Part shown: piece after piece, positions 42,822 through 62,123 of the stretch | Layout of the letters: the number at the start of each line of letters is the position of its first letter | Numbering within the stretch: position 1 is the first letter of the stretch | IMG/VR virus record: IMGVR_UViG_3300012988_000016 | Location: 62,001 to 126,000 of that record | Strand: one strand, 5' to 3' | DNA length: 64,000 nt | Notes under the pieces: model-generated | What the model was told of the DNA's origin: nothing | Database searches by the model: none | What the model saw: the letters and a program-made list of their open reading frames with translations, nothing else | Position numbers and translations under genes: made by a program

Positions 42822-42989
42822 ATGAAATTCGAAGTTTTGATTCACTTGGACGGTCGTCGTGAGCATGTTGTGACAGAGCGTGCTGAGGGCGAGAATTGCG
42901 ATAGGATTTTCCAGTACAACGCGGGGACGATGGTCTCTGACGAGCGTACCGGTCCCGATTGCGACACGGTCCAAGAAATCACCACCTGA
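42822..42989 (+). CDS. DUF2997-like small protein (55 aa)
   Basis: MKFEVLIHLDGRREHVVTERAEGENC...: the I..DG.V...V....G..C pattern of DUF2997; upstream of DUF1257-like and Ycf46-like genes. Confidence 0.7.
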   Translation: MKFEVLIHLDGRREHVVTERAEGENCDRIFQYNAGTMVSDERTGPDCDTVQEITT

Positions 42990-43023
42990 TCAGTCAAGAA
43001 ATTCACAAGGAAAGGATACCTAC

Positions 43024-43356
43024 ATGTCTCACAAGGTGACGTTTACGTCGACATTCACAAATCCGGATTTGGTCGCTTCTGCCCTGACCCTCTCCAAGTA
43101 CTCCTTCGATCGCAATGGGAACAATTTCCGCATCACAAGCGGTCCGTTCAGCAATGCTACGATCGATGCTGATACGGGAACCATCACGGGCGATTCGGAC
43201 TACAAGAATCACAAGTCCGAAGCCTTCGCTGCCTTCCGTCAAACGTACAGCGAAGCTGAATTCGTCACCAAGGCGAAGCAGACGGGCGTCGACATCGAGA
43301 GTCGTGAGGTGCTCAAGAATGGCACCATTCGCCTCCGTTGCGCTACGTTGGGCTGA
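43024..43356 (+). CDS. DUF1257 / Ycf35-like protein (110 aa)
   Basis: Starts MSH.VTF.S.F.N.DL...AL; ITGDSDY...FRQTYSEAEFVTKAKQTG..IES.E.LKNGTIRL fits the DUF1257 pattern; AAGGA RBS. Confidence 0.75.
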   Translation: MSHKVTFTSTFTNPDLVASALTLSKYSFDRNGNNFRITSGPFSNATIDADTGTITGDSDYKNHKSEAFAAFRQTYSEAEFVTKAKQTGVDIESREVLKNGTIRLRCATLG

Positions 43357-43444: not shown

Positions 43445-45010
43445 ATGAACGAAGACCTGAAGTTCCATCTGCGATCAATCACTCGATTCATCTACTTCGT
43501 CACTGACGAAGAAGACCTCTTCATCGAAGACATGAAGAAATCGCTTGAAGACCTCAAACAGCAGACTTTCGTCTACAACAGTGCCTTTGGGTTGCAGCCG
43601 ATCAAGAATGTGACGGACGATTGGAGGCTCAGAAGCCATAATACGGACGATAAGACCGAGAACATTCAGGCGGCACTGACGAAGATCTATACTGATGATC
43701 CGATGCAGTTCCGTAACTTCTACATCATCACCGATCCAGATCGTTGGTTGAAAGAGGAGTATCTGGTCCGCCGATTCCTCAACATCGCCCACCAGCTGAC
43801 CAGTGATGACAAGAACATCAAGATCCTGATTTTCGTTGGACCCCGACTGGTGATCCCTCAGAAGCTTCGCCGATACATTGAAGTGGTGCACGACAAGGGG
43901 ATGGCTGAAGAGCAGACGACAGAGATCCTGCAGAACATCTGCACACATTTGGAAATGCCTTTGCCAGATGTACGCCCTTTCAAAGGGCTGACCAGGTACG
44001 AGATCGATGCTGCGGTGGCGCAAAGCGTGATCAAGAATCGAGTCAAAGACCCAACCAAGAAGGTCGTTTTTTCCAAGGACATTTTGGATTACAAGCGACG
44101 TCAACTTAAGAAGACAGATCTGCTAGAATACCAGGATACGACGGGATTCACGTTCGATGCTTTGGGGGGTGCGGATCGCTTCAAAGCTTGGGCCATGGAG
44201 ACCAAAGACGCTTGGACTGAAGAAGGGCAGGCGTTCGGACTTACTCCGCCGAGAGGTGTCCTGTTGGCTGGCATCTGGGGATGTGGCAAATCCCTTGCCG
44301 TCAAGGCATTGGCCAACGCCTGGGGTTTGCAGGTTGTTCGTTTGGAACTGGGCAAACTTCGTAGCAGCGGCGTGGGCGATTCAGAAGCCAATGTCTACAA
44401 GGCGTTGCATTTGATCGAAGCGGTCGCCCCCTGTGTGGTGATGATCGATGAAGCTGAGAAGTCTCTCTCTGGAGCAGCCTCATCGGCTCAAACTGATTCA
44501 GGAACCACTAGCCGCATGTTGGCTAGCCTGTCGACTTGGATTCAAGAAACCAATGCGCCAGTATGCCTGGCATTGACGGCCAATACCCTCAATGGTTTGC
44601 CGACCGAGATCATCAATCGTATGGACGAACGCTTCTTCTTCGATCTGCCAACTGAAGATGAGCGAATGGATATTCTCAAGATCCATCTGCGAAAGACCAA
44701 GCAAGACCTGAAGCGATTCAACTTCGCCATCCTGGCTGAGGCGGCCAACAACCTGGTTGGTCGAGAGATCGAACAAGCCATCAGAGCTGCTATGCGGCGT
44801 TCGTACAACCTCCAGAAGGAAAGCCTGGATCCGGAAGTCTTGTTGGATCAGTTGAAGACCAAACCTCGTTTGCTCAGGACAATGGGGGATGCGGTCAAGG
44901 AATTGCTCGATTGGGTTGGCTTCGATCCTGAGGTTGGGGAAGGCGTGCGGGCCAAGTTCGCCTCTTCTGACAGGGTTAAGATGTTTTCAGGTCGTGTCAA
45001 AAATGACTGA
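43445..45010 (+). CDS. Ycf46-like AAA+ ATPase
   Basis: Degenerate N-terminal AAA-like domain; PRGVLLAGIWGCGKS; APCVVMIDEAEK; DSGTTSRML; TAN..LP.E...MDERFFFDLP; LVGREIEQA. Confidence 0.88.
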   Translation: MNEDLKFHLRSITRFIYFVTDEEDLFIEDMKKSLEDLKQQTFVYNSAFGLQPIKNVTDDWRLRSHNTDDKTENIQAALTKIYTDDPMQFRNFYIITDPDRWLKEEYLVRRFLNIAHQLTSDDKNIKILIFVGPRLVIPQKLRRYIEVVHDKGMAEEQTTEILQNICTHLEMPLPDVRPFKGLTRYEIDAAVAQSVIKNRVKDPTKKVVFSKDILDYKRRQLKKTDLLEYQDTTGFTFDALGGADRFKAWAMETKDAWTEEGQAFGLTPPRGVLLAGIWGCGKSLAVKALANAWGLQVVRLELGKLRSSGVGDSEANVYKALHLIEAVAPCVVMIDEAEKSLSGAASSAQTDSGTTSRMLASLSTWIQETNAPVCLALTANTLNGLPTEIINRMDERFFFDLPTEDERMDILKIHLRKTKQDLKRFNFAILAEAANNLVGREIEQAIRAAMRRSYNLQKESLDPEVLLDQLKTKPRLLRTMGDAVKELLDWVGFDPEVGEGVRAKFASSDRVKMFSGRVKND

Positions 45011-46172
45011 TGATCTGGCAAAGGTCGAATATGGGGGTCTGGTACAAAGACTGGACCCCCAGGTTCTCACCAAAGCAAATCCTGAACCGGTAGACTTGCT
45101 CCAAGCAAGAGCCGATATTCAGAGAGATGCCCCTTTACAACAGATCTTCAGAGACTCTGTCACTGAGCAGTGGCCAGAGGGGCGGCTGGAATCAGAAGTG
45201 ACGTCTGCCCTCAAGAAGCTTTGGCCCTCAGGAGACCCAACCGAAGCAGCTCAATATCTGGCGGACGAATATCGTCAGTTGGGTGAGGGTCTGCACCTCA
45301 TTTCCACTGAGACGGGAAAGGTTCTGATAGCCTTCAAAGAGGAAGATCTGTACCAACCTTCTATGGTGCCTCGTACAGATGGGACGATGGCTACCCCTTT
45401 GCCAAAGATTCGCCCTGACTTGATGTCCGCGTTGGTGACCTGGCAGCATGAGCGGGCTAGCGAAAAGGTTGTCCTGAGGCAATTGGCCGAAAAAGGGTGT
45501 CAGACCGAGCTGTTGCGGGAGCTGGGCGATCCCAGGCTTCTGGTGGCCTCCAGGGCAGGCCGGAAGCACATCGTCAAGTCCTTGGCTGAGCTGGCTCCAA
45601 GAAGCCTCCTAGAAGCGGCTGGTGGCTCATCCGCCGCTTTCCTGAAGTTGTTCACCCTGGTGGACCAACCTTTCTCGGAAAGTCCTGTCGGATATACGTA
45701 CATCAGAGGTTCCGCCCAAGCTACATCGGTACAGTCGATTGCCGATCTGTCTACCACCAACCTACGGCACAACCGTGTTCAGGCTCTACAAGGGGCGATC
45801 ACCCAAGGTTGGATCCGAGAGATGGCCAGGCAGTTGTCCGATTTCTCTGGTTGGATGGCGCCCGAAGAAGTGACGCTTGATGACCTGGTGTCGCTGCCAG
45901 CCAGCTTTTGGATCCTACCTCCTGATTTGGTCCGGCCATTCCGAAGCCTAGATTCCAAGATTATCGTCTTGGTGGCAGAGAACGCTCGGCCGATGGGACT
46001 GACGGGCCATTTGGGTTACCTCTATGTTCCTGAAATGTTTCAGGCCAAAGACAGGGAATTCTTTAGCCGCTGGGAATCGGTAGCTAGATTGGAATTTGAG
46101 ATGTGGGTCAAGGAAGACGCCCTCAGACCACTGAACGTGACAGGAATGTCCCATGAGGCACATTTGGTCTGA
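45003..46172 (+). CDS. hypothetical protein (389 aa), possibly capsid-fold derived
   Basis: ATG overlaps the end of the ATPase gene; the C-terminal half weakly resembles HK97-type capsid proteins (unverified). Confidence 0.6.
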   Translation: MTDDLAKVEYGGLVQRLDPQVLTKANPEPVDLLQARADIQRDAPLQQIFRDSVTEQWPEGRLESEVTSALKKLWPSGDPTEAAQYLADEYRQLGEGLHLISTETGKVLIAFKEEDLYQPSMVPRTDGTMATPLPKIRPDLMSALVTWQHERASEKVVLRQLAEKGCQTELLRELGDPRLLVASRAGRKHIVKSLAELAPRSLLEAAGGSSAAFLKLFTLVDQPFSESPVGYTYIRGSAQATSVQSIADLSTTNLRHNRVQALQGAITQGWIREMARQLSDFSGWMAPEEVTLDDLVSLPASFWILPPDLVRPFRSLDSKIIVLVAENARPMGLTGHLGYLYVPEMFQAKDREFFSRWESVARLEFEMWVKEDALRPLNVTGMSHEAHLV

Positions 46173-47150: not shown

Positions 47151-47639
47151 ATGCCGATCACATATCTGGAAGGCGATGCCACCTGCCCACAAATAGATGG
47201 CCCTAAGATTATTGCACACGTCGTCAACAGCAGTGGCGGTTGGGGCCGCGGTTTCGTCTTAGCGGTCTCCGACAGATGGTTGGGCCCTGAGCAACGGTAC
47301 CGCAAATGGTATGCCAGCAAGAAGAATTTCAAGTTAGGCGCCGTTCAGACCCTCCAAGTTGAGCCAGACATTTGGGTCTGCAACATGTTGGCTCAAGAGG
47401 GGTATCTGACTACCAAGAAACATGGGCCGCCGCTACGGCTGCCCCGCCTCAAAGAATGTTTGGACCTGTTGAAGGAAGCTGCCATTGAGAGGCATGCTTC
47501 CGTCCATATGCCTCGTATAGGATGCGGATTAGGTGGCTCTGATTGGGATGTGGTCGGCCTGATGGTCGAACAATCTTTGGGTGAAGTGCCGGTCTATGTG
47601 TACGATCTTTATCCTCAATCTGTAGTTCGCCAAACCTGA
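47151..47639 (+). CDS. macrodomain protein (ADP-ribose binding/hydrolase, TARG1/DarG-like class)
   Basis: ITYLEGDAT; IIAHVVNSSGGWGRGF; VHMPRIGCGLGG. Confidence 0.9.
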   Translation: MPITYLEGDATCPQIDGPKIIAHVVNSSGGWGRGFVLAVSDRWLGPEQRYRKWYASKKNFKLGAVQTLQVEPDIWVCNMLAQEGYLTTKKHGPPLRLPRLKECLDLLKEAAIERHASVHMPRIGCGLGGSDWDVVGLMVEQSLGEVPVYVYDLYPQSVVRQT

Positions 47640-47680
47640 CATAGATTGTCCTAGCTGAGGTTGACTCAGATGTGCCGCAC

Positions 47681-47686
47681 GGTGTA
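47681..47686 (+). promoter_or_regulatory. GGTGTA(AGAT) motif upstream of the vWA gene
   Basis: 9 nt before an in-frame ATG at 47696; the SD-led start is at 47780. Confidence 0.6.
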
Positions 47687-47779
47687 AGATGGGGCATGTA
47701 TGATGACGGCACTCCCTTTTGCGCTACCTGTCACTTGGTAGTCGTTGCCTGTTTGTGTGGTCATCCAAAGGAGAATTCA

Positions 47780-50188
47780 ATGGATCCGTTTAGTTACAAA
47801 GTTTCAGACAAGCTCTTTTTGGTCCGTCAAGCGGTCGCTACCGAGAAGCCGAAGACGATCGCTGTAACGCCGCCCACCAACCACGTGATGGTGATCGACT
47901 GCTCCGGCTCAATGTACGGAGAATTGCCGAGGATTCGTGAGCAGTTGAAGAAGAAGCTCCCCAAGTTGCTCAAGGCGGAGGACACCATCAGTATCATCTG
48001 GTTCTCGGGCCGGAGAGAGTGCGGTATCTTGCTCGAAGCAGAGCCGGTCGCAAGCTTGAAGGAGCTACAGACAGTCGAAGCTGCGATTGATCGTTGGCTC
48101 CGGCCAGTCGGCTTGACGGGTTTCAAAGACCCGTTGGAGCTCGTTCCAGGCTTGACGAAGAAGATTTCAGCAGCTCGTCCTAACAGCGTGTTCTCGTTGT
48201 TCTTCATGTCGGACGGTTGCGACAATTGCTCCTCTCGCCCTGAGATCATCAAGGCTGTGGAAGCTGCTGGCCAAAGTGTGGCGTCGGCTACTTTCGTCGA
48301 GTATGGCTACTACGCTGATCGTCAATTGCTGGCTCAGATGGCAGAGAAGGCCGGTGGTTCGACCATCTTTGCTCAAGACTTCGATCAATTCGAGCCAGCC
48401 CTGGAAGCCAGCTTGCTGAAGCGAACCTCTGGCGCCCCCAAGATTGAACTGAAGATCGCAGGCGACGCAATCTGTGGTTTCGCTTTCGGCTTCTCTGGCG
48501 ATGATCTGTTGACCTTCGCAGTAGAAGGCTCGGTCATTCATGTCCCCAAGGATCAGCACGACATCTGGTATCTCTCACCCAACAGTGTAGGGACCCAGGG
48601 TGTCGATCTGTTGACCATTTCGGCCGAAGCGGTGGATCCCAATGTGACGGCTTCCTCAAATGCCGAGGTCATGCATCCAGCCTACGCCGCCATCAGCCTT
48701 TTCGCCAACCGTATGAAGTCGGATGTGGTGTTGGCGACGCTCAAGGCGTTGGGGGATGTGACGTTCATCGAGCAATTCTCGACCTGTTTTGGTAAGCAGA
48801 AATACAGCGAGTTCGTGGCCGCTACCCAAAAGGCGGCTTTTGATCGTAGCGTTCGGTTCACCAACGGCCGAGATCTGAACCGTATTCCGAAGGACGATGC
48901 CTTCACGGTGCTGGATCTGCTTCGTGTCTTGTCGAGTGATGACTCAAATCGCTTGCTACTTGAAAGTAAAGACTTTAGGTACAATCGAATCGGGCGTGGT
49001 CAGATCGATTCCAGTTCGGTCCTGACTGATGAAGAACAAGCCGAGGTGGCCCGCCTGACGGCTGAAATGGCCAAGACCAAAGACAGCAATAAGGTGAAGG
49101 AATTCACTGCAAAGATTGCTGCCATCACGGATGCGAAGGACAAGCCCCTCAAGTTCGACGCCACCCCGATTCCGGATGGTGTCGAGATCAATGGTCTGGT
49201 CTACAACGAAGAACGTCCCAATGTGAGCGTTCGCGTCTTGCGTGGAGGTTCGGTCGACCTGAGCGACCGTTTGGCGAAAGCCGATCAGGCCGTGGCCAGC
49301 AAGATCCCGCACACCTTCCCGACCAACATTTGGCGCAACTACACCCTCATCAAGGACGGCTTGGTCAATGTCGAACGCTTGCCGGTCCGCTTGACGGCTG
49401 GTACGATCCGCACGCTCAAAGCACAAGGGATGCCGATCGAGACCATCTTGGGTGTCGATGGTGAGGATGCTGCCCAGGCTCGCATCCGTGCCGCCAAAGC
49501 GTCTGACGGTCGTGACGTCAGTGTGGTGTTCGACCTCAAGAGTCTGCCGATCATCAATCGCCAGATGATCAAAGAGGCGAGTGCTCAGGTCCTGTTCGAG
49601 AAAGAGTTCGAGCTCTGCAAAGCTCGGGCGGCTCAGAAGGTCTACAAGTGGTACTTGGAGCAAAACTTCAAGAAAGTGTCCAAGGGCCTGGCTGAACAAT
49701 ACGGCACAGAAAGTGCCGACTGGCTCAAAGAACAGGGCATCACGGACGGGGGCTTCAACCCCAAGTCGGTCCAAGCAGAGTCTGTGGACGTCTACATGGG
49801 CAAGGAACTGAAGACCAGCCTCAAGGGTCTCTCTACGATCCCCTCTGTGAACGAGGCCAAGAAGAAGATCGCGGCGGCTGGCAAGCTGACCCCCTCGGTC
49901 TCTTTGCTGGTTCCCTACATTGCTGAAGTGGACGCCTACCTGGCCAGTGCTGAGCACAAGGCTGATGAGGCGGCTTTGGAGAAGTGGCTGGGGGATCGAG
50001 CCAAGCAGGCCACTCAGAAGGTGCGAGGGCTGTTGTTCGAACTCTCCAACATCAAGTTCTCGATCATTGTCGGTCAGATCTGGCCAATTGAGTTCAAATC
50101 TTTGGACGAAAACACCCTCACCATTACGGTGGACGGAAACCAGATCGTAGGGACCTTGGAGCAACGGGAAGTAGAGATCAAGATTTGA
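47780..50188 (+). CDS. large vWA (MIDAS) domain protein
   Basis: AAGGAG RBS; MIDAS VIDCSGSM; LTGF; FFMSDG; ~600-aa uncharacterised C-terminal region; strongly C-ending codons. Confidence 0.85.
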   Translation: MDPFSYKVSDKLFLVRQAVATEKPKTIAVTPPTNHVMVIDCSGSMYGELPRIREQLKKKLPKLLKAEDTISIIWFSGRRECGILLEAEPVASLKELQTVEAAIDRWLRPVGLTGFKDPLELVPGLTKKISAARPNSVFSLFFMSDGCDNCSSRPEIIKAVEAAGQSVASATFVEYGYYADRQLLAQMAEKAGGSTIFAQDFDQFEPALEASLLKRTSGAPKIELKIAGDAICGFAFGFSGDDLLTFAVEGSVIHVPKDQHDIWYLSPNSVGTQGVDLLTISAEAVDPNVTASSNAEVMHPAYAAISLFANRMKSDVVLATLKALGDVTFIEQFSTCFGKQKYSEFVAATQKAAFDRSVRFTNGRDLNRIPKDDAFTVLDLLRVLSSDDSNRLLLESKDFRYNRIGRGQIDSSSVLTDEEQAEVARLTAEMAKTKDSNKVKEFTAKIAAITDAKDKPLKFDATPIPDGVEINGLVYNEERPNVSVRVLRGGSVDLSDRLAKADQAVASKIPHTFPTNIWRNYTLIKDGLVNVERLPVRLTAGTIRTLKAQGMPIETILGVDGEDAAQARIRAAKASDGRDVSVVFDLKSLPIINRQMIKEASAQVLFEKEFELCKARAAQKVYKWYLEQNFKKVSKGLAEQYGTESADWLKEQGITDGGFNPKSVQAESVDVYMGKELKTSLKGLSTIPSVNEAKKKIAAAGKLTPSVSLLVPYIAEVDAYLASAEHKADEAALEKWLGDRAKQATQKVRGLLFELSNIKFSIIVGQIWPIEFKSLDENTLTITVDGNQIVGTLEQREVEIKI

Positions 50189-52886: not shown

Positions 52887-53267
52887 ATGACAATGACATT
52901 TGTAGCAGTTCAGTTCAAAGAGAGTGAAACGTCGCACCAACTGGTCGAACGTTTCATGCAGACCTCCGCCGCCAAGGAGCTAAAGTTCACCCAATTGGAG
53001 GTGTTGGGCGTGCTTCTGTTGGGGAAGAACAAGTACTTGCGGTTCAGAACCGACAGCAGACACGTTCCAGAAATACTGGGCCAGCTGTTACTTGATGGTC
53101 GAGGTGTGGTGCACCAGGACGGGGGAGGCTATTCGGTCAAGTTGCCGTCAGGTAAGAAAGGTATCGCCTCAGCTGCCGCCATGCAGGCCATCGGAGACCC
53201 GACGCTGAAGAGGGTCTACAAGGGGACGGCCATCAAGCTGTGGGATCGGCAGTTTATGCCGTCTTAA
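52887..53267 (+). CDS. hypothetical protein
   Basis: 126 aa. Confidence 0.7.
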   Translation: MTMTFVAVQFKESETSHQLVERFMQTSAAKELKFTQLEVLGVLLLGKNKYLRFRTDSRHVPEILGQLLLDGRGVVHQDGGGYSVKLPSGKKGIASAAAMQAIGDPTLKRVYKGTAIKLWDRQFMPS

Positions 53268-53299
53268 AGCTTTCATCGGTTCCCCTAGGGTGGACGCCT

Positions 53300-54049
53300 A
53301 TGAAAATAGCTACAATTCAGTTCGCTCCCGTACTCAAGGATGTGGAAGGCAACCTTAGGACGGTAGCTAGGATGATCATTGAGGCCGCTGAAAAAGGGGC
53401 TGAATTGATCGTGTGCCCTGAATTGTGCACAACTGGCTACAGCTTCATGAGCTCTGAAGATGCTGAGCCATATGCAGAGGTGATCTCTAACTACATGAGA
53501 TCCGGATCCCCGCCTCGTTCTATGGAGGTGATGGGGGCGTTGGCCAAGAAGTACCAGATAGCCATCGCTTGGGGGGTGATGGAGAAGGATTATGTCTCTG
53601 GTAAACTCTACAATAGCCAAGTTCTGATGTTGCCCAACCAGACCTTCGTACAGGTAGCCAAACTGAACCGATGGGGGAACGACTACCTCTGGGCAGAAGC
53701 TGGTACAGCCAGTCCCCCCATCATCGATTTCTTGGGCAAACGCATAGGATTGCTGATTTGCCGCGACATTCGGAACAAGTCATCCAAACTAACGGACCTT
53801 TACGAAGCAGGAGACGCCGATATCGTCTGCTTCAGCTCGAACTTTGGGGACGGCGGCTTCCCCAGCACAACGTGGATGGACTTCGCAGTCGATAATCGAG
53901 TGTGGTTAGCTGTCAGTAACCGATACGGTCAAGAGACCTGCAACAATTTCGGTGAGGGTGGAATATGCGTGATTTCACCCAAGGGTAAAGTCTACTGTGA
54001 TGGCGTAGAGTGGAACAAGCCTTGCATCGTCTACGCTGATATCCTTTGA
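53300..54049 (+). CDS. carbon-nitrogen hydrolase (nitrilase superfamily amidase)
   Basis: MKIATIQF; catalytic triad E (CPELCTTGY), K (VAKLNRW), C (LLICRD); KLYNS; AVSNRYG. Confidence 0.9.
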   Translation: MKIATIQFAPVLKDVEGNLRTVARMIIEAAEKGAELIVCPELCTTGYSFMSSEDAEPYAEVISNYMRSGSPPRSMEVMGALAKKYQIAIAWGVMEKDYVSGKLYNSQVLMLPNQTFVQVAKLNRWGNDYLWAEAGTASPPIIDFLGKRIGLLICRDIRNKSSKLTDLYEAGDADIVCFSSNFGDGGFPSTTWMDFAVDNRVWLAVSNRYGQETCNNFGEGGICVISPKGKVYCDGVEWNKPCIVYADIL

Positions 54050-54061
54050 GTTCTAGGGGTT

Positions 54062-54067
54062 GGTGTA
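54062..54067 (+). promoter_or_regulatory. GGTGTA motif upstream of clpX
   Basis: 9 nt before ATG 54077; no SD between motif and start. Confidence 0.6.
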
Positions 54068-54076
54068 AAGACCCCT

Positions 54077-55318
54077 ATGAGAAGCTGCGATCTTTGCCAA
54101 CGGCCTGAGAACGAAGTCAAGCAAATCGTCGAACTGATCAAGGATGGTCCTTGCATTTGCAATCGTTGTTTCGGCACAGCCGCCGGCTTGATGAATGCGG
54201 CTCAGAAGCCTAAAGAAGAGCCGCTACTTCTAAAACCCAAAGCAATTTACTCCCGTTTGGGCGATTATGTGGTGGGGCAAGATGCCTCCCGTCAAGATCT
54301 GTCAGTAGCGGTCTACAACCACTACAAGCGGCGTGACGCTGCTAAACGAGGCTTGTTGTTGCAGGATGTTGAGATTCAGAAGAGCAACATCCTGATCCTG
54401 GGTCCTAGCGGAACCGGCAAAACCCAGATGGCACGCACGCTAGCTAGACTGCTGAAGGTGCCATTCTTTGTCGGAGACGCCACTCGATTGACCCAGACGG
54501 GCTATGTGGGTGAGGATGTCGAAACGTTGGTTGAAGGCCTCGTAACAGCAGCTGGCAATGACCCTGAGAAGGCCGAGTGGGGGATCATCTTCCTGGATGA
54601 AGTGGACAAGATTGCTCGAAAGAGTGGTCGGGAAGCGGCTGGTTACCGAGACATCTCAGGAGAGGCGGTCCAGCAAGCACTGTTGAAGCTGCTGGAAGGT
54701 ACACAGTTGACGCTATCCAAAGGTGGCCTCAATGGTATGGGGAACGAGACCTACACGATCGATACCAGTAATATCCTGTTCATTTGTGCAGGATCGTTTG
54801 CTGGAATTGAGGAGTCGGTCAACCGTCGAAAGAATAAGCATGTGAAGGTGGGATTTGGTTCGGAATCCCGCCAACAGCACACCTCTGCAGAGGCCTATCT
54901 AGCGATTGAGGAAGAAGATTTGCTGGATTTCGGCCTGATTCCTGAAATGTTGGGCCGCATCCCTGTCAGGACTACCACCATCCCATTGACGGAAGATGAG
55001 ATGGTCAGGATTCTGACTGAACCCAAGGACGCCATCATTCGACAGGTCAAAGCCTTGTTTGAGATGGACGGTATCGATCTTCATTTTGATGATGAGGCGC
55101 TCCGAGCTATTGGCCAAAAAGCGATCAAGAGCCAGACAGGTGCGAGAGCGTTGCGGACTATCGTTGAACGGATCCTCAAAACCTATGCTTTTGAATGCCC
55201 CAGTGATCCTACCGTAAAAGGCATCATGATCACCAAGGCAGCGGTAGAGGGGACGGCTGAGGCGGCCATTTTGCGGGAACCTTTGGAAGTGCAGCCTCTT
55301 GCCATCCAGGCAGGCTGA
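54077..55318 (+). CDS. clpX: ClpX ATP-dependent unfoldase
   Basis: Zn-binding CDLC...CNRC; KSNILILGPSGTGKT; GYVG pore loop; IIFLDEVDKIARKS; VQQALLKLLEG; VGF ClpP-docking loop; TGARALR. Confidence 0.95.
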   Translation: MRSCDLCQRPENEVKQIVELIKDGPCICNRCFGTAAGLMNAAQKPKEEPLLLKPKAIYSRLGDYVVGQDASRQDLSVAVYNHYKRRDAAKRGLLLQDVEIQKSNILILGPSGTGKTQMARTLARLLKVPFFVGDATRLTQTGYVGEDVETLVEGLVTAAGNDPEKAEWGIIFLDEVDKIARKSGREAAGYRDISGEAVQQALLKLLEGTQLTLSKGGLNGMGNETYTIDTSNILFICAGSFAGIEESVNRRKNKHVKVGFGSESRQQHTSAEAYLAIEEEDLLDFGLIPEMLGRIPVRTTTIPLTEDEMVRILTEPKDAIIRQVKALFEMDGIDLHFDDEALRAIGQKAIKSQTGARALRTIVERILKTYAFECPSDPTVKGIMITKAAVEGTAEAAILREPLEVQPLAIQAG

Positions 55319-57475: not shown

Positions 57476-58324
57476 GTGAATCCTATCCAAAGTGGCGCCG
57501 CCGAGCTGATCCCCTATAGTTTGTCCAGGTGGACTGATGTTCCAGCTTCGAAATGGAACTGGTTCTTGATCCAGCTCAGTCAAGGGTGGATGACGGCTTT
57601 CGATCAGCGGACCTCCATCCCTCAGAAGTGGAGTCTCAAACCTGAGGACACGTTGGGGCTCATCTTCTGGACCAAGGATCCGACCAATCTGATCCTGTCT
57701 AGAGGCCTGCTTGCCCCTTACAATGTGAAGATTCATGTGACGGCGACCGGCTGGGAAGAGGTTGAGAAAGGGGCTCCTAACAGGTTGGAATCAGCTTTGC
57801 TGCTCAAAGAGACGGTCAAAGAATTTGGAGCCGCCAATGTGACGTGGCGTTTCTCTCCTGTACCGATCGTTCCAGATGTGTTGGAGAGGTTTCAAGTCCT
57901 TGCTCAAGCGGCCTGTGCGGCCGGCTTGGATGCGGTCTATCTGTCGTTTCTTCAGCCCAACGATTTGGTTCCAGAGACCCGCACTCCAGCCGAACGGCTA
58001 GAGTTGTTGCAACAGATGGCCGCTTTGGGCCGCATGTATGGGATTGAGGTTCGGCTCTGCAATGAGGATCGTCTCCTTGAGGGGGTAGACCCATACCCCA
58101 ACCTGACCTCCGGAGTTTGTGCAGATCCGAAAGACTTTGCCCTATCCTCCAGAGAGGTGCCGCCCTCAGAGGGGTGTGGGTGTGTGATGGCGGTCGACCC
58201 TTTCACGGCCAATGAGTCGTGTGGATTTGGCTGCACCTACTGTTATGCCGCCGATAAGAGTCAAGCACCTAAGAAGTACAATACCACTCGTAATTTACCT
58301 GTGATACAATCTAGGGATGGTTGA
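57476..58324 (+). CDS. DUF1848-family protein (SplB-like, C-terminal CxxxCxxC)
   Basis: SLSRWTDVPA...WF; LIFWTKDP; VTWRFSPV; GCGC...ESCGFGCTYCYA. Confidence 0.82.
   Translation: MNPIQSGAAELIPYSLSRWTDVPASKWNWFLIQLSQGWMTAFDQRTSIPQKWSLKPEDTLGLIFWTKDPTNLILSRGLLAPYNVKIHVTATGWEEVEKGAPNRLESALLLKETVKEFGAANVTWRFSPVPIVPDVLERFQVLAQAACAAGLDAVYLSFLQPNDLVPETRTPAERLELLQQMAALGRMYGIEVRLCNEDRLLEGVDPYPNLTSGVCADPKDFALSSREVPPSEGCGCVMAVDPFTANESCGFGCTYCYAADKSQAPKKYNTTRNLPVIQSRDG
58302..58310 (+). promoter_or_regulatory. extended -10 promoter (TGnTACAAT), leaderless geometry
   Basis: TGATACAAT ends 6 nt before ATG 58317. Confidence 0.55.
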
Positions 58325-61008: not shown

Positions 61009-61512
61009 ATGAAAATAGGCGACATTCTCTTCTATCAAGACCGTTACTGGAAGCTGGAGACCAGTAATCGGGAATTCCGCACCTGTCAGCTGGTCAGTTT
61101 TGACGGCACCAAGCAAGAGGTGGCGGACGATCTAGATGAAAACAACAGCACGGTGTTGATAGTTTGCAATCCAGCCGAGCAGTGGCCCTTTTGCAGCATC
61201 GCCATCAAGGTCAAGGCCGGACCTTTGAGAGGCATCACACGAGCCGGCACTGTCTTGACCCCCATGGTGGATTGGATTCCCAGCGATTTTCAACGTCCAG
61301 GCGGGGCCATCTTTTTCAATCCACGTTTGCGATTAAAAGTGGGTGAGATCTTGGTGGCGACCCATCAGGATGGTTCGTTCAGCCGGATCACCATCACCCC
61401 TGGTTTTGGAACGCTCAAGCGCAAAGCCGCTCGGGCGAAGGCCAAAGAACCAAAGCCCCAACAATCGGTTTACGACCAACTGATGGATGACAGTCTGTTC
61501 AGGCTCAAATGA
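61009..61512 (+). CDS. hypothetical protein
   Basis: 167 aa. Confidence 0.7.
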   Translation: MKIGDILFYQDRYWKLETSNREFRTCQLVSFDGTKQEVADDLDENNSTVLIVCNPAEQWPFCSIAIKVKAGPLRGITRAGTVLTPMVDWIPSDFQRPGGAIFFNPRLRLKVGEILVATHQDGSFSRITITPGFGTLKRKAARAKAKEPKPQQSVYDQLMDDSLFRLK

Positions 61513-62123
61513 GACGCCAGCTTCCCATAGCGGTGGAAGTCTCGATTGATCGATTCAGAGCGCAATCGCAGATATTGGCCTCTGAACTGGAGACTGAGGT
61601 TCGGCCACTAGCTAGTTGTCTCAAAGGCTGCCATAATTGCTGCTATCATCCCGTATTGGTGACGATCCTTGAAGGTCTGCATATTTACGGTTGGCTGGTC
61701 GAACAACACCTGTGGACTACCGAGCTTCGCAATCGACTTTCGGAGCATTCTGACCATACGTTCGGTCTATCGCTGCCAGTTTGGCTGATGAGCCGAATCG
61801 CTTGTCCGTTGTTGGATGGGGGACTGTGCAGTATCTATCCCGCTCGCCCTTTCGCCTGTAAGATAACGTTCTCTACGGGTGACCCGGAAGATTGCGACCC
61901 ACATCGATTGGCTGGTAATCCCAATATGACGCCCAAACGAGAAGCTTTGGAAGCCTTGGGCTTGACTGAATCTAGCTTATTGAGGCAACACAGTCTACCT
62001 CATGTTCGACTACCGCTCTCAACCGCATTGCTGTATGGGGAGCGGATTGTCAAAGATCAGATCAGCATTGAGGATCTCCAACGTGAGATCGGGAAGGACT
62101 TGGATGCCATCAACCAAAGTTAG
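61509..62123 (+). CDS. YkgJ-family cysteine-cluster (Zn/Fe-chelating) protein
   Basis: CLKGCHNCC; CPLLDGGLCSIYPARPFAC. Confidence 0.85.
   Translation: MRRQLPIAVEVSIDRFRAQSQILASELETEVRPLASCLKGCHNCCYHPVLVTILEGLHIYGWLVEQHLWTTELRNRLSEHSDHTFGLSLPVWLMSRIACPLLDGGLCSIYPARPFACKITFSTGDPEDCDPHRLAGNPNMTPKREALEALGLTESSLLRQHSLPHVRLPLSTALLYGERIVKDQISIEDLQREIGKDLDAINQS

What the first reader, a model, noticed from the sequence alone, without database searches (positions are those of the whole stretch)
53300..55318. Nta1-like nitrilase-family amidase next to an intact ClpX: possible phage N-degron/proteolysis module
Sequence: an amidase with an E-K-C triad lies 27 nt upstream of a ClpX that retains its Zn finger, GYVG pore loop and VGF docking loop; no clpP is in the window. 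After the catalytic Lys the amidase reads KLNRWGNDYLWAEAG. From memory this resembles fungal N-terminal amidase Nta1 (K.FL..D..WA.EG) more than the usual bacterial E...F.PG pattern. Established: Nta1 is a nitrilase-superfamily enzyme that deamidates N-terminal Asn/Gln in the N-degron pathway, and ClpX docks on ClpP through its IGF-type loop. Inference: the phage may rewrite protein N-termini and redirect host ClpP.
Basis: partly seen in the sequence, partly recalled or inferred. Interest (0 to 1): 0.7.

Follow-up and report, generated by a model that had tools for sequence, protein, structure and literature searches.

The report
Phage amidase beside ClpX, not Nta1-like
A soil huge phage carries a real nitrilase-family amidase directly upstream of an intact ClpX unfoldase, but the amidase resembles small-molecule amidases rather than the yeast N-terminal amidase, and the two genes are neighbours only because a long stretch of gene order is conserved in this phage group.

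Summary
Both genes exist as described. The amidase (53300-54049, 249 aa) has Glu41/Lys121/Cys154. It lies 27 nt upstream of ClpX (54077-55318), which has four zinc-finger Cys, Walker A/B, GYVG and a VGF loop. No clpP was found in the 309-kb phage record or in four 94-100% complete relatives.

Amidase then ClpX is conserved in 33 of 37 non-redundant loci of one clade, but inside a collinear block of at least 20 kb, with 64-4387 bp between the two genes. Complete huge phages carry the amidase without ClpX. Other phages (Atu_ph07, phage G, Lak) carry ClpX without the amidase. No ClpS or Aat was found.

Most likely these are two independent genes: a small-molecule amidase of unknown substrate, and a ClpX that uses host ClpP. 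Interest is low to moderate.

The parts
53300..54049 (+). Nitrilase-superfamily (CN_hydrolase) amidase, 249 aa. It belongs to a subfamily almost confined to huge phages. The longest ORF starts at GTG 53240, but homologues support the ATG at 53300.
53420..53422 (+). Catalytic Glu41 (PELCTTGY)
   Evidence: Aligned to E42 of PH0642; invariant in 44 sequences; coordinates
53660..53704 (+). Catalytic Lys121 and the subfamily motif K-x-N-x-[WF]-[GA]-[NQ]-D-x-[LI]-W. Asp128 (53681-53683) stands where other nitrilase-superfamily enzymes have the second catalytic Glu.
   Evidence: tetrad described in PMC7616060
53759..53773 (+). Nucleophile Cys154 in C-R-D-I-R. Arg158 (Cys+4) aligns with the Arg of E. 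coli 2-oxoglutaramate amidase YafV.
54050..54076 (+). 27-nt spacer between the amidase stop and the ClpX start. No terminator-like site was found in it.
54077..55318 (+). ClpX AAA+ unfoldase, 413 aa
   Evidence: NCBIfam ClpX equivalogs at 457 and 411 bits, above their cut-offs; Pfam AAA_2, ClpB_D2-small; clade alignment
54086..54169 (+). N-terminal C4 zinc-binding domain of ClpX (C4, C7, C28, C31)
   Evidence: Four Cys invariant in 17 clade members; Pfam zf-C4_ClpX 24.5 bits, below the cut-off of 27; coordinates
54401..54424 (+). Walker A GPSGTGKT
54500..54511 (+). Pore-1 loop GYVG
54587..54610 (+). Walker B IFLDEVDK
54848..54856 (+). IGF-type ClpP-docking tripeptide, here VGF. G259 and F260 are invariant, and the preceding residue is L, V, M or I across the clade.
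52887..53267 (+). Conserved 126-aa gene just upstream of the amidase, present in 28 of 37 loci. It has a confident alpha/beta fold with no significant structural match. It is not ClpS-like or SspB-like.
57476..58324 (+). DUF1848 protein, the next conserved member of the collinear block downstream of ClpX (26 of 37 loci)

Best explanation
The finding consists of two separate, ordinary genes. They are neighbours because gene order is conserved across a long core block in one clade of soil and environmental huge phages. Gene 1 is a single-domain nitrilase-superfamily amidase from a subfamily almost confined to huge phages. From the family's established mechanism, I infer that Cys154 attacks the carbonyl (or nitrile) carbon of a small substrate. 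A thioester forms with loss of ammonia or an amine, assisted by Glu41, Lys121 and Asp128, and water then releases the acid. The substrate is unknown. My best guess is a small amide, possibly anionic. This rests on Arg155/Arg158 next to the nucleophile, and on the nearest solved relatives being the Pyrococcus glutaramide/aliphatic amidase and dinitrile nitrilase. Gene 2 is a complete ClpX unfoldase. It keeps the zinc-binding domain, the ATPase motifs, the GYVG pore loop and an IGF-type (VGF) loop, and the phage has no ClpP. It therefore most likely docks on the host's ClpP to degrade chosen proteins, and/or remodels proteins on its own. Shown here: the identity, integrity and conservation of both genes; the lack of any special similarity to Nta1; the synteny pattern; and the absence of ClpP, ClpS and Aat. 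Inferred: the chemistry, the substrate class and the docking on host ClpP.

For: Phage restriction. There are 53 IMG/VR loci, mostly on contigs of 100-512 kb. Only 2 MAG hits were found in 185,579 species genomes, and no related cultured or GenBank phage.

Nearest cellular relatives. These are the N-domains of tandem CN_hydrolase proteins of about 530-650 aa, one named from Anaerolineales.

ClpX integrity. An intein sits in the ClpX of a relative. I take this as consistent with a gene the phage needs, because inteins usually sit at conserved sites of important genes (my own knowledge).

No ClpP. None was found in the record or in four 94-100% complete relatives, while the control genomes scored positive.

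Synteny. DNA polymerase, AAA ATPase, the 126-aa gene, amidase, ClpX, DUF1848 and the CxxCxxCC gene keep the same order and strand across the clade. The inserts vary, and the amidase-ClpX gap ranges from 64 to 4387 bp.

Independence. Complete genomes G004, G005, G012 and G013 have an amidase relative but no ClpX. L064, L077 and L087 and all viral ClpX at 40-45% identity lack the amidase nearby. Atu_ph07, phage G and Lak phages have ClpX but no amidase.
Against: No substrate is known, and the anionic small-amide guess rests on two Arg residues and on relatives at only 25-26% identity. The NCBIfam archaeal nitrilase model scores 85.8 bits against a cut-off of 500, so this is not an equivalog of any named enzyme. 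The subfamily has many invariant residues of its own (N123, W125, D128, W131, PP139-140, R155, a GDGGFP segment (mostly GDGGFPS), NRYG, C233, C242). That pattern would also fit an unusual or macromolecular substrate. Within the clade the amidase and ClpX do stay close and on the same strand in 33 of 37 loci, so a functional tie cannot be excluded. Host ClpP docking is inferred from a tripeptide only. The host is unknown and no expression data exist, because only soil DNA runs hold the sequence. The record is estimated to be 65% complete.
Confidence: 0.6

Rival explanations
1. The amidase is an Nta1-type N-terminal amidase that converts N-terminal Asn/Gln to Asp/Glu. Together with phage ClpX docked on host ClpP, it forms a phage N-degron module.
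For: The genes are 27 nt apart on the same strand, and the order is kept in 33 of 37 loci of the clade. ClpX has a docking loop and no phage ClpP exists. S. pombe Nta1 is among the many Swiss-Prot nitrilase-fold matches (rank 12, TM 0.80, rmsd 5.5). Asp at Lys+7 and the W-A motif differ from the Pyrococcus pattern.
Against: Nta1 is about 15th by profile (45.5 bits, N-terminal half only). It is absent from the top 50 by Foldseek and VIA-align and is not found by the motif profile. The D/E...W-A..G pattern is shared with bacterial tandem CN-hydrolases. Bacterial N-degrons use ClpS and ClpAP (PMC11441550), and no ClpS or Aat is in the record. The amidase occurs in complete phage genomes that have no ClpX. 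The conserved upstream 126-aa protein is not an adaptor-like fold.
Confidence: 0.04
2. The amidase works in nucleotide or DNA-base metabolism or modification. For example it might hydrolyse an amide, carbamoyl or nitrile group on a nucleotide-derived intermediate. ClpX would be unrelated.
For: In relatives the amidase lies among nucleotide-metabolism genes. Thymidylate synthase, DHFR and NT5C occur in L002 and L004, ThyX in L007, and a YfbR-like 5'-deoxynucleotidase and a MazG-like protein in the distant clade. Arg155/Arg158 next to the nucleophile could bind a phosphate or carboxylate.
Against: Metabolic genes cluster in huge phages in any case. In the window itself the nearest neighbours are genes of unknown function. 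No NAD synthetase domain is in the record. No known base-modification pathway uses this subfamily, as far as I know. This rival is not exclusive of the best explanation.
Confidence: 0.15
3. The phage ClpX works without any ClpP, as a stand-alone unfoldase or remodeller (as ClpX does for MuA). It would act in replication or virion assembly, as proposed for jumbo-phage ClpX.
For: No ClpP is in the phage genomes. ClpX lies in a replication-gene block with DNA polymerase and helicases. The literature suggests chaperone, assembly or replication roles for jumbo-phage ClpX (PMC7824862; PMC6102473).
Against: G259 and F260 of the IGF-type tripeptide are invariant, and the preceding residue stays hydrophobic, in 17 divergent clade members. 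This is hard to explain if ClpP docking were not used. The two activities are not exclusive.
Confidence: 0.25

Closest known systems
Pyrococcus 'branch 13' nitrilase-superfamily enzymes: P. horikoshii PH0642 amidase (1j31, 6ypa, 7ovg) and P. abyssi nitrilase (3ivz)
   Different: Identity is only 25-26%. The phage subfamily has K-x-N instead of K-x-H, Asp instead of the second Glu, and C-R-D-x-R instead of C-F-D-W-F. The NCBIfam archaeal nitrilase model scores far below its cut-off (85.8 against 500). The subfamily is phage-restricted.
Bacterial tandem CN_hydrolase proteins (about 530-650 aa, 'nitrilase-related carbon-nitrogen hydrolase', e.g. Anaerolineales HZD55953.1)
   Same: They are the nearest cellular sequence relatives (190-225 bits to the family profile). 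Their N-domains share the W-A-x-x-G segment and sometimes Asp at Lys+7.
   Different: They have two fused CN_hydrolase domains. They keep K-x-H and lack C-R-D-x-R. They form a separate clade from the single-domain phage proteins (98/91 support). Their function is also unknown.
Yeast Nta1 N-terminal amidase (5hyy, 5b62)
   Same: Same superfamily and catalytic triad type. It is matched at 45.5 bits over the N-terminal half.
   Different: The match is about 15th by profile, partial, and not among the top 50 by structure. S. cerevisiae Nta1 is 459 aa in the PDB record, against 249 aa here. No partner N-degron components are present.
E. coli YafV / Nit2-type omega-amidase (2-oxoglutaramate amidase)
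   Same: Similar size and fold (Swiss-Prot Nit2 and YafV matches at TM about 0.8). Arg at Cys+4 aligns.
   Different: 26% identity. YafV sits on a long branch outside the phage clade. The Lys-region motif differs.
ClpX of cellular organisms and of jumbo phages (Agrobacterium phage Atu_ph07 gp2, Bacillus phage G gp258, Lak phages)
   Same: Full ClpX architecture, 40-47% identical to those phage ClpX proteins. Phage ClpX is already noted in the literature (PMC7824862, PMC6102473).
   Different: Atu_ph07 also encodes ClpP, ClpA and ClpS, whereas this clade has no ClpP. There is no RKH loop. Some clade members carry an intein in ClpX.

Membership tests
Nitrilase superfamily (Pfam CN_hydrolase PF00795) | Profile match above the curated cut-off | tested here: met
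   98.7 bits against a cut-off of 23.2
Nitrilase superfamily (Pfam CN_hydrolase PF00795) | Alpha-beta-beta-alpha sandwich fold | tested here: met
Nitrilase superfamily (Pfam CN_hydrolase PF00795) | Glu-Lys-Cys catalytic triad | tested here: met
   E41, K121 and C154 align to E42, K113 and C146 of PH0642 and are invariant in 44 sequences
Nitrilase superfamily (Pfam CN_hydrolase PF00795) | Second catalytic Glu at Lys+7 (Glu-Glu-Lys-Cys tetrad; PMC7616060) | tested here: not met
   Invariant Asp128 at that position. Asp or Glu also alternate in the bacterial tandem relatives.
Nta1-type N-terminal amidase | Closest to Nta1 among nitrilase branches by sequence profile | tested here: not met
   45.5 bits over profile positions 1-134, about rank 15, against 94 bits for 3ivz. 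The single-sequence search gives E 0.0025.
Nta1-type N-terminal amidase | Closest to Nta1 by structure | tested here: not met
   No Nta1 entry in the top 50 by Foldseek or VIA-align. S. pombe Nta1 model is rank 12 in Swiss-Prot with rmsd 5.5.
   A profile of residues 100-140 found Pyrococcus enzymes and B. cereus formamidase but not Nta1 at E <= 10. W-A..G is shared with bacterial tandem proteins. I could not obtain an Nta1 sequence to view the alignment directly.
Nta1-type N-terminal amidase | Deamidates N-terminal Asn/Gln of peptides | not testable with these tools
   Needs an enzyme assay
Nta1-type N-terminal amidase | Works with downstream N-degron components (in bacteria: ClpS, Aat/Bpt, ClpAP) | tested here: not met
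   No ClpS or Leu/Phe-transferase domain in the 309-kb record. The pathway is described in PMC11441550. Bpt was not searched, and the record is about 65% complete.
ClpX | Match to the curated ClpX equivalog models above cut-off | tested here: met
   NF003745 at 457.2 bits against 359; TIGR00382 at 410.8 against 370.75
ClpX | N-terminal C4 zinc-binding domain | tested here: met
   C4, C7, C28 and C31 are invariant in the clade. The Pfam model scores 24.5 bits here, below its cut-off of 27, and 35.2 bits in a relative.
ClpX | Walker A, Walker B and GYVG pore-1 loop | tested here: met
   GPSGTGKT, IFLDEVDK and GYVG
ClpX | IGF-type ClpP-docking loop | tested here: met
   VGF at 258-260; [LVMI]-G-F across 17 clade members
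ClpX | RKH loop (characteristic of proteobacterial ClpX; from my own knowledge) | tested here: not met
   The region reads GTQLTLSKGGLNGMGNETYTIDTSN, with no RKH
ClpX | Cognate ClpP encoded alongside | tested here: not met
   No PF00574 match in the record or in G006-G010
Archaeal nitrilase (NCBIfam NF040852 equivalog) | Score above the equivalog cut-off | tested here: not met
   85.8 bits against 500

The most novel reading that the evidence does not exclude
The huge-phage-restricted amidase subfamily, with its own Glu-Lys-Asp-Cys site and many private invariant residues, acts on proteins or peptides. It would deamidate N-terminal or side-chain Gln/Asn, or cleave a secondary amide, and so create or erase signals read by the co-inherited phage ClpX working with host ClpP. 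This would be a phage-encoded degron-editing system with no cellular bacterial counterpart.
Probability: 0.05. Interest if true: 0.8.

Novelty: new member of a known kind. Interest (0 to 1): 0.27.

Why it matters
The evidence does not support it. What remains is more modest but useful. First, there is a well-defined, uncharacterised nitrilase-superfamily subfamily, almost confined to soil and environmental huge phages, whose substrate is worth finding. Second, a whole clade of huge phages carries an intact ClpX and no ClpP. That makes hijacking of host ClpP testable once a cultured member or a host is found.

Tried and rejected
1. A direct view of the Nta1 alignment was not possible. I found no way to obtain an Nta1 sequence. 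A 63-residue fragment of the amidase found nothing in the PDB. The Nta1 structure paper and the Pace & Brenner review are not held.

2. I tested whether the conserved 126-aa upstream gene is a ClpS- or SspB-like adaptor. The model is confident (pLDDT 95), but the only matches are weak ferredoxin-like/S6-like ones (E 0.05 or worse in the PDB; best AFDB E 2e-3 at TM 0.47). This idea is rejected.

3. I looked for a stand-alone glutaminase role for a phage NAD synthetase. No NAD_synthase domain is in the record.

4. I looked for a defence or anti-defence assignment. The amidase has no PADLOC hit, and ClpX has only generic AAA hits.

5. PHROGs gave only an unnamed family and a weak 'NAD synthetase' hit for the amidase.

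6. The ESM Atlas gave only viral and bacterial CN_hydrolase clusters.

7. A CTAGGG-N(0-2)-TGG motif lies upstream of both genes. It has 3 sites in the window, and 9 of 100 shuffles do as well, so it is not significant.

8. Expression evidence is lacking. Only soil DNA runs hold the sequence and there are no RNA runs.

9. Complex prediction was not used. I do not claim that the two proteins bind, and neighbouring genes alone are not reason enough to run it.

10. I could not read the model's coordinates, so the substrate pocket was not inspected.
Full report
WHAT IS THERE. The window is bases 62001-126000 of a 308,895-bp IMG/VR virus record that CheckV estimates to be 65% complete. Almost all genes are on the + strand. 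They include a DNA polymerase, a DnaB-like helicase and another helicase. The same DNA is held only by soil metagenome DNA runs. The amidase ORF runs 53240-54049, but all homologues begin at the ATG at 53300, giving 249 aa. It is a Pfam CN_hydrolase (98.7 bits). Alignment to P. horikoshii PH0642 places Glu41, Lys121 and Cys154 on that enzyme's Glu42, Lys113 and Cys146. All three are invariant in 44 homologues. The stop codon is followed by 27 nt and then the ClpX start at 54077. ClpX (413 aa) passes both NCBIfam ClpX equivalog cut-offs. It carries four Cys of the zinc-binding domain, GPSGTGKT, GYVG, IFLDEVDK and VGF.

IS THE AMIDASE Nta1-LIKE? I built a 44-sequence alignment of the family (A1) and searched all PDB sequences with its profile. 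The P. abyssi nitrilase and the P. horikoshii amidase score 94 and 92 bits over the full length. Next come yeast Nit3 (54), a glutamine-dependent NAD synthetase (52), beta-alanine synthase (50) and true nitrilases and cyanide dihydratases (46-50). Nta1 scores 45.5 bits over profile positions 1-134 only, about rank 15.

A profile made only from residues 100-140, the motif region, retrieved the Pyrococcus enzymes and B. cereus formamidase but not Nta1, even at E <= 10. I could not obtain an Nta1 sequence to inspect the recalled pattern directly. The motif is real and strongly conserved: K-x-N-x-[WF]-[GA]-[NQ]-D-x-[LI]-W. However, its W-A..G part, and sometimes Asp at Lys+7, also occur in the N-domains of bacterial tandem CN_hydrolase proteins.

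WHAT THE AMIDASE IS. An exhaustive profile search of 1.8 billion representatives found a tight core family. After it come single-domain relatives of about 250 aa, and then many proteins of about 530-650 aa. Six of these were scanned in Pfam, and all six are two fused CN_hydrolase domains. One is named as an Anaerolineales 'nitrilase-related carbon-nitrogen hydrolase'.

In a maximum-likelihood tree the window's family is a 100/99-supported clade. It sits within a larger group of single-domain proteins (98/91), some of them from viral contigs. That group is separate from the tandem bacterial domains and from E. coli YafV.

The family occurs on 53 IMG/VR contigs, mostly 100-512 kb. It is found in only two MAG contigs among 185,579 species genomes. 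No related cultured or GenBank phage was found.

Two features stand out. First, Asp128 is invariant where the superfamily normally has the second catalytic Glu (tetrad described in PMC7616060). Asp and Glu alternate in the tandem relatives, so this is a variant and not a break with the family. Second, the sequence after the nucleophile is C-R-D-x-R. Arg158 aligns with the Arg of E. coli 2-oxoglutaramate amidase YafV. From memory, the equivalent Arg binds a substrate carboxylate in N-carbamoyl-D-amino-acid amidohydrolase. I treat this only as a lead toward an anionic small substrate.

No hit points to a named enzyme. The NCBIfam matches are all far below their cut-offs, PADLOC gives nothing, and PHROGs gives an unnamed family.

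IS THE PAIR A MODULE? Among 37 non-redundant loci whose amidase is at least 45% identical to the window's, 33 have ClpX downstream on the same strand. The gap varies from 64 to 4387 bp and holds unrelated small ORFs.

The same loci also keep, in the same order and orientation, the rest of the block. The AAA ATPase at 43445 is present in 33 of 37, its downstream gene in 34 of 37, the 126-aa gene in 28 of 37, DUF1848 in 26 of 37 and the genes at 61009 and 61509 in 20-21 of 37. The DNA polymerase also appears where the flank reaches it. Amidase and ClpX identities fall together (75/68, 58/57, 50/54, 46/49%), as expected for vertical inheritance of one block. The adjacency is therefore no better conserved than that of neighbours with no suggested link.

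Outside the clade the pair dissolves. Nine loci with a 33-38% identical amidase have no ClpX within 10 kb. The records behind five of them were searched and hold none anywhere, including four complete genomes with terminal repeats. Positive controls were found in the same search. Core-clade records G001, G002 and G003 also lack ClpX, but they are incomplete.

Conversely, L064, L077 and L087, and every viral ClpX at 40-45% identity, have no amidase nearby. Atu_ph07, phage G and Lak phages have ClpX but no amidase. The conserved 126-aa gene just upstream folds confidently but is not ClpS-like or SspB-like.

THE PROTEOLYSIS SIDE. No ClpP domain is present in the record or in four 94-100% complete relatives that carry ClpX, while the control genomes scored positive. 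In 17 divergent clade ClpX proteins, G259 and F260 of the docking tripeptide are invariant and the preceding residue is L, V, M or I. The zinc-finger Cys, the Walker motifs and the pore-1 loop are also conserved (G, Y and the last G invariant; Val nearly so). One relative carries a Hint/intein insertion in the P-loop region of ClpX. Inteins tend to sit at conserved sites of important genes (my own knowledge).

These data fit a working ClpX that docks on host ClpP. A ClpP-independent remodelling role is not excluded and has been suggested for jumbo-phage ClpX (PMC7824862; PMC6102473). Phage-encoded ClpX is thus already known from annotation.

Bacterial N-degrons are recognised by ClpS and destroyed by ClpAP (PMC11441550). 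Neither ClpS nor the Aat transferase is found in the record. This further weakens a link between an N-terminal amidase and ClpX.

VERDICT. The Nta1 and N-degron interpretation is not supported. The host-ClpP idea is plausible but inferred. The most likely picture is two independent genes in a conserved core block: a phage-restricted small-molecule amidase of unknown substrate, and a ClpX that exploits host ClpP. A protein-directed role for the amidase is not excluded, and I give it about 5%. Novelty: new members of known kinds. Interest is low to moderate, mainly because the amidase subfamily is uncharacterised and confined to huge phages.

Noticed in passing
L060:1465-3840 (-), a 512-kb relative (G008); also L019, L031, L033 and L044, where the ClpX match is split: The ClpX of some clade members is interrupted by an insert of about 340-380 aa near the Walker A region. 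In the one case scanned (L060), the insert matches the Hom_end-associated Hint (intein) domain.
   Followed up: partly
window 57476-58324 (+): A DUF1848 protein with a Cys cluster is conserved downstream of ClpX in 26 of 37 loci. It matches the PADLOC model 'RTasDUF1848', which is associated with defence reverse transcriptases. Its function is unknown.
   Followed up: partly
window 52887-53267 (+): A conserved 126-aa protein lies directly upstream of the amidase. It has a very confident predicted alpha/beta fold (pLDDT 95) and no significant match in the PDB or AFDB clusters.
   Followed up: yes
window 43445-45010 and 44889-46172 (+): A classic AAA ATPase (phrog_8638) and an overlapping downstream gene of unknown function are kept together in 33-34 of 37 related loci. 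A weak DUF1257 hit lies just upstream at 42880-43356.
   Followed up: partly
window 47672-50188 (+) and 47151-47639 (+): An 838-aa von Willebrand A-domain protein and a small ORF with a weak Macro-domain hit. Both are found in only 3 of 37 related loci, so they are a variable insert in the conserved block.
   Followed up: partly
window 61509-62123 (+); L052:7382-7990 (-): A CxxCxxCC (putative Zn/Fe-chelating) protein lies within about 2-10 kb of the amidase in both the ClpX-positive clade and the distant ClpX-negative clade.
   Followed up: no
L011:14277-14978 (-); L007:15538-16377 (+): In ClpX-less relatives, a pyroglutamyl peptidase (Peptidase_C15) and a papain-family cysteine protease lie 4-6 kb from the amidase. 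Each was seen in a single locus only.
   Followed up: no
window 807-32280 (+): A run of very large ORFs (1960, 729, 1138, 1942, 872, 592 and 1349 aa). Three of the smaller ORFs in this stretch gave no PHROG match, and the large ones were not examined.
   Followed up: no
P0131, P0134, P0135, P0138, P0145, P0170 (bacterial metagenome proteins): A widespread family of bacterial proteins with two fused CN_hydrolase domains (about 530-650 aa, some longer). Their function is unknown. They are the closest cellular relatives of the phage amidase.
   Followed up: partly
window 53285-53293, 54053-54063, 58311-58320 (+): A CTAGGG-N(0-2)-TGG motif lies just upstream of the amidase and ClpX starts and at the end of the DUF1848 gene. 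Three sites are not more than chance (9 of 100 shuffles).
   Followed up: yes
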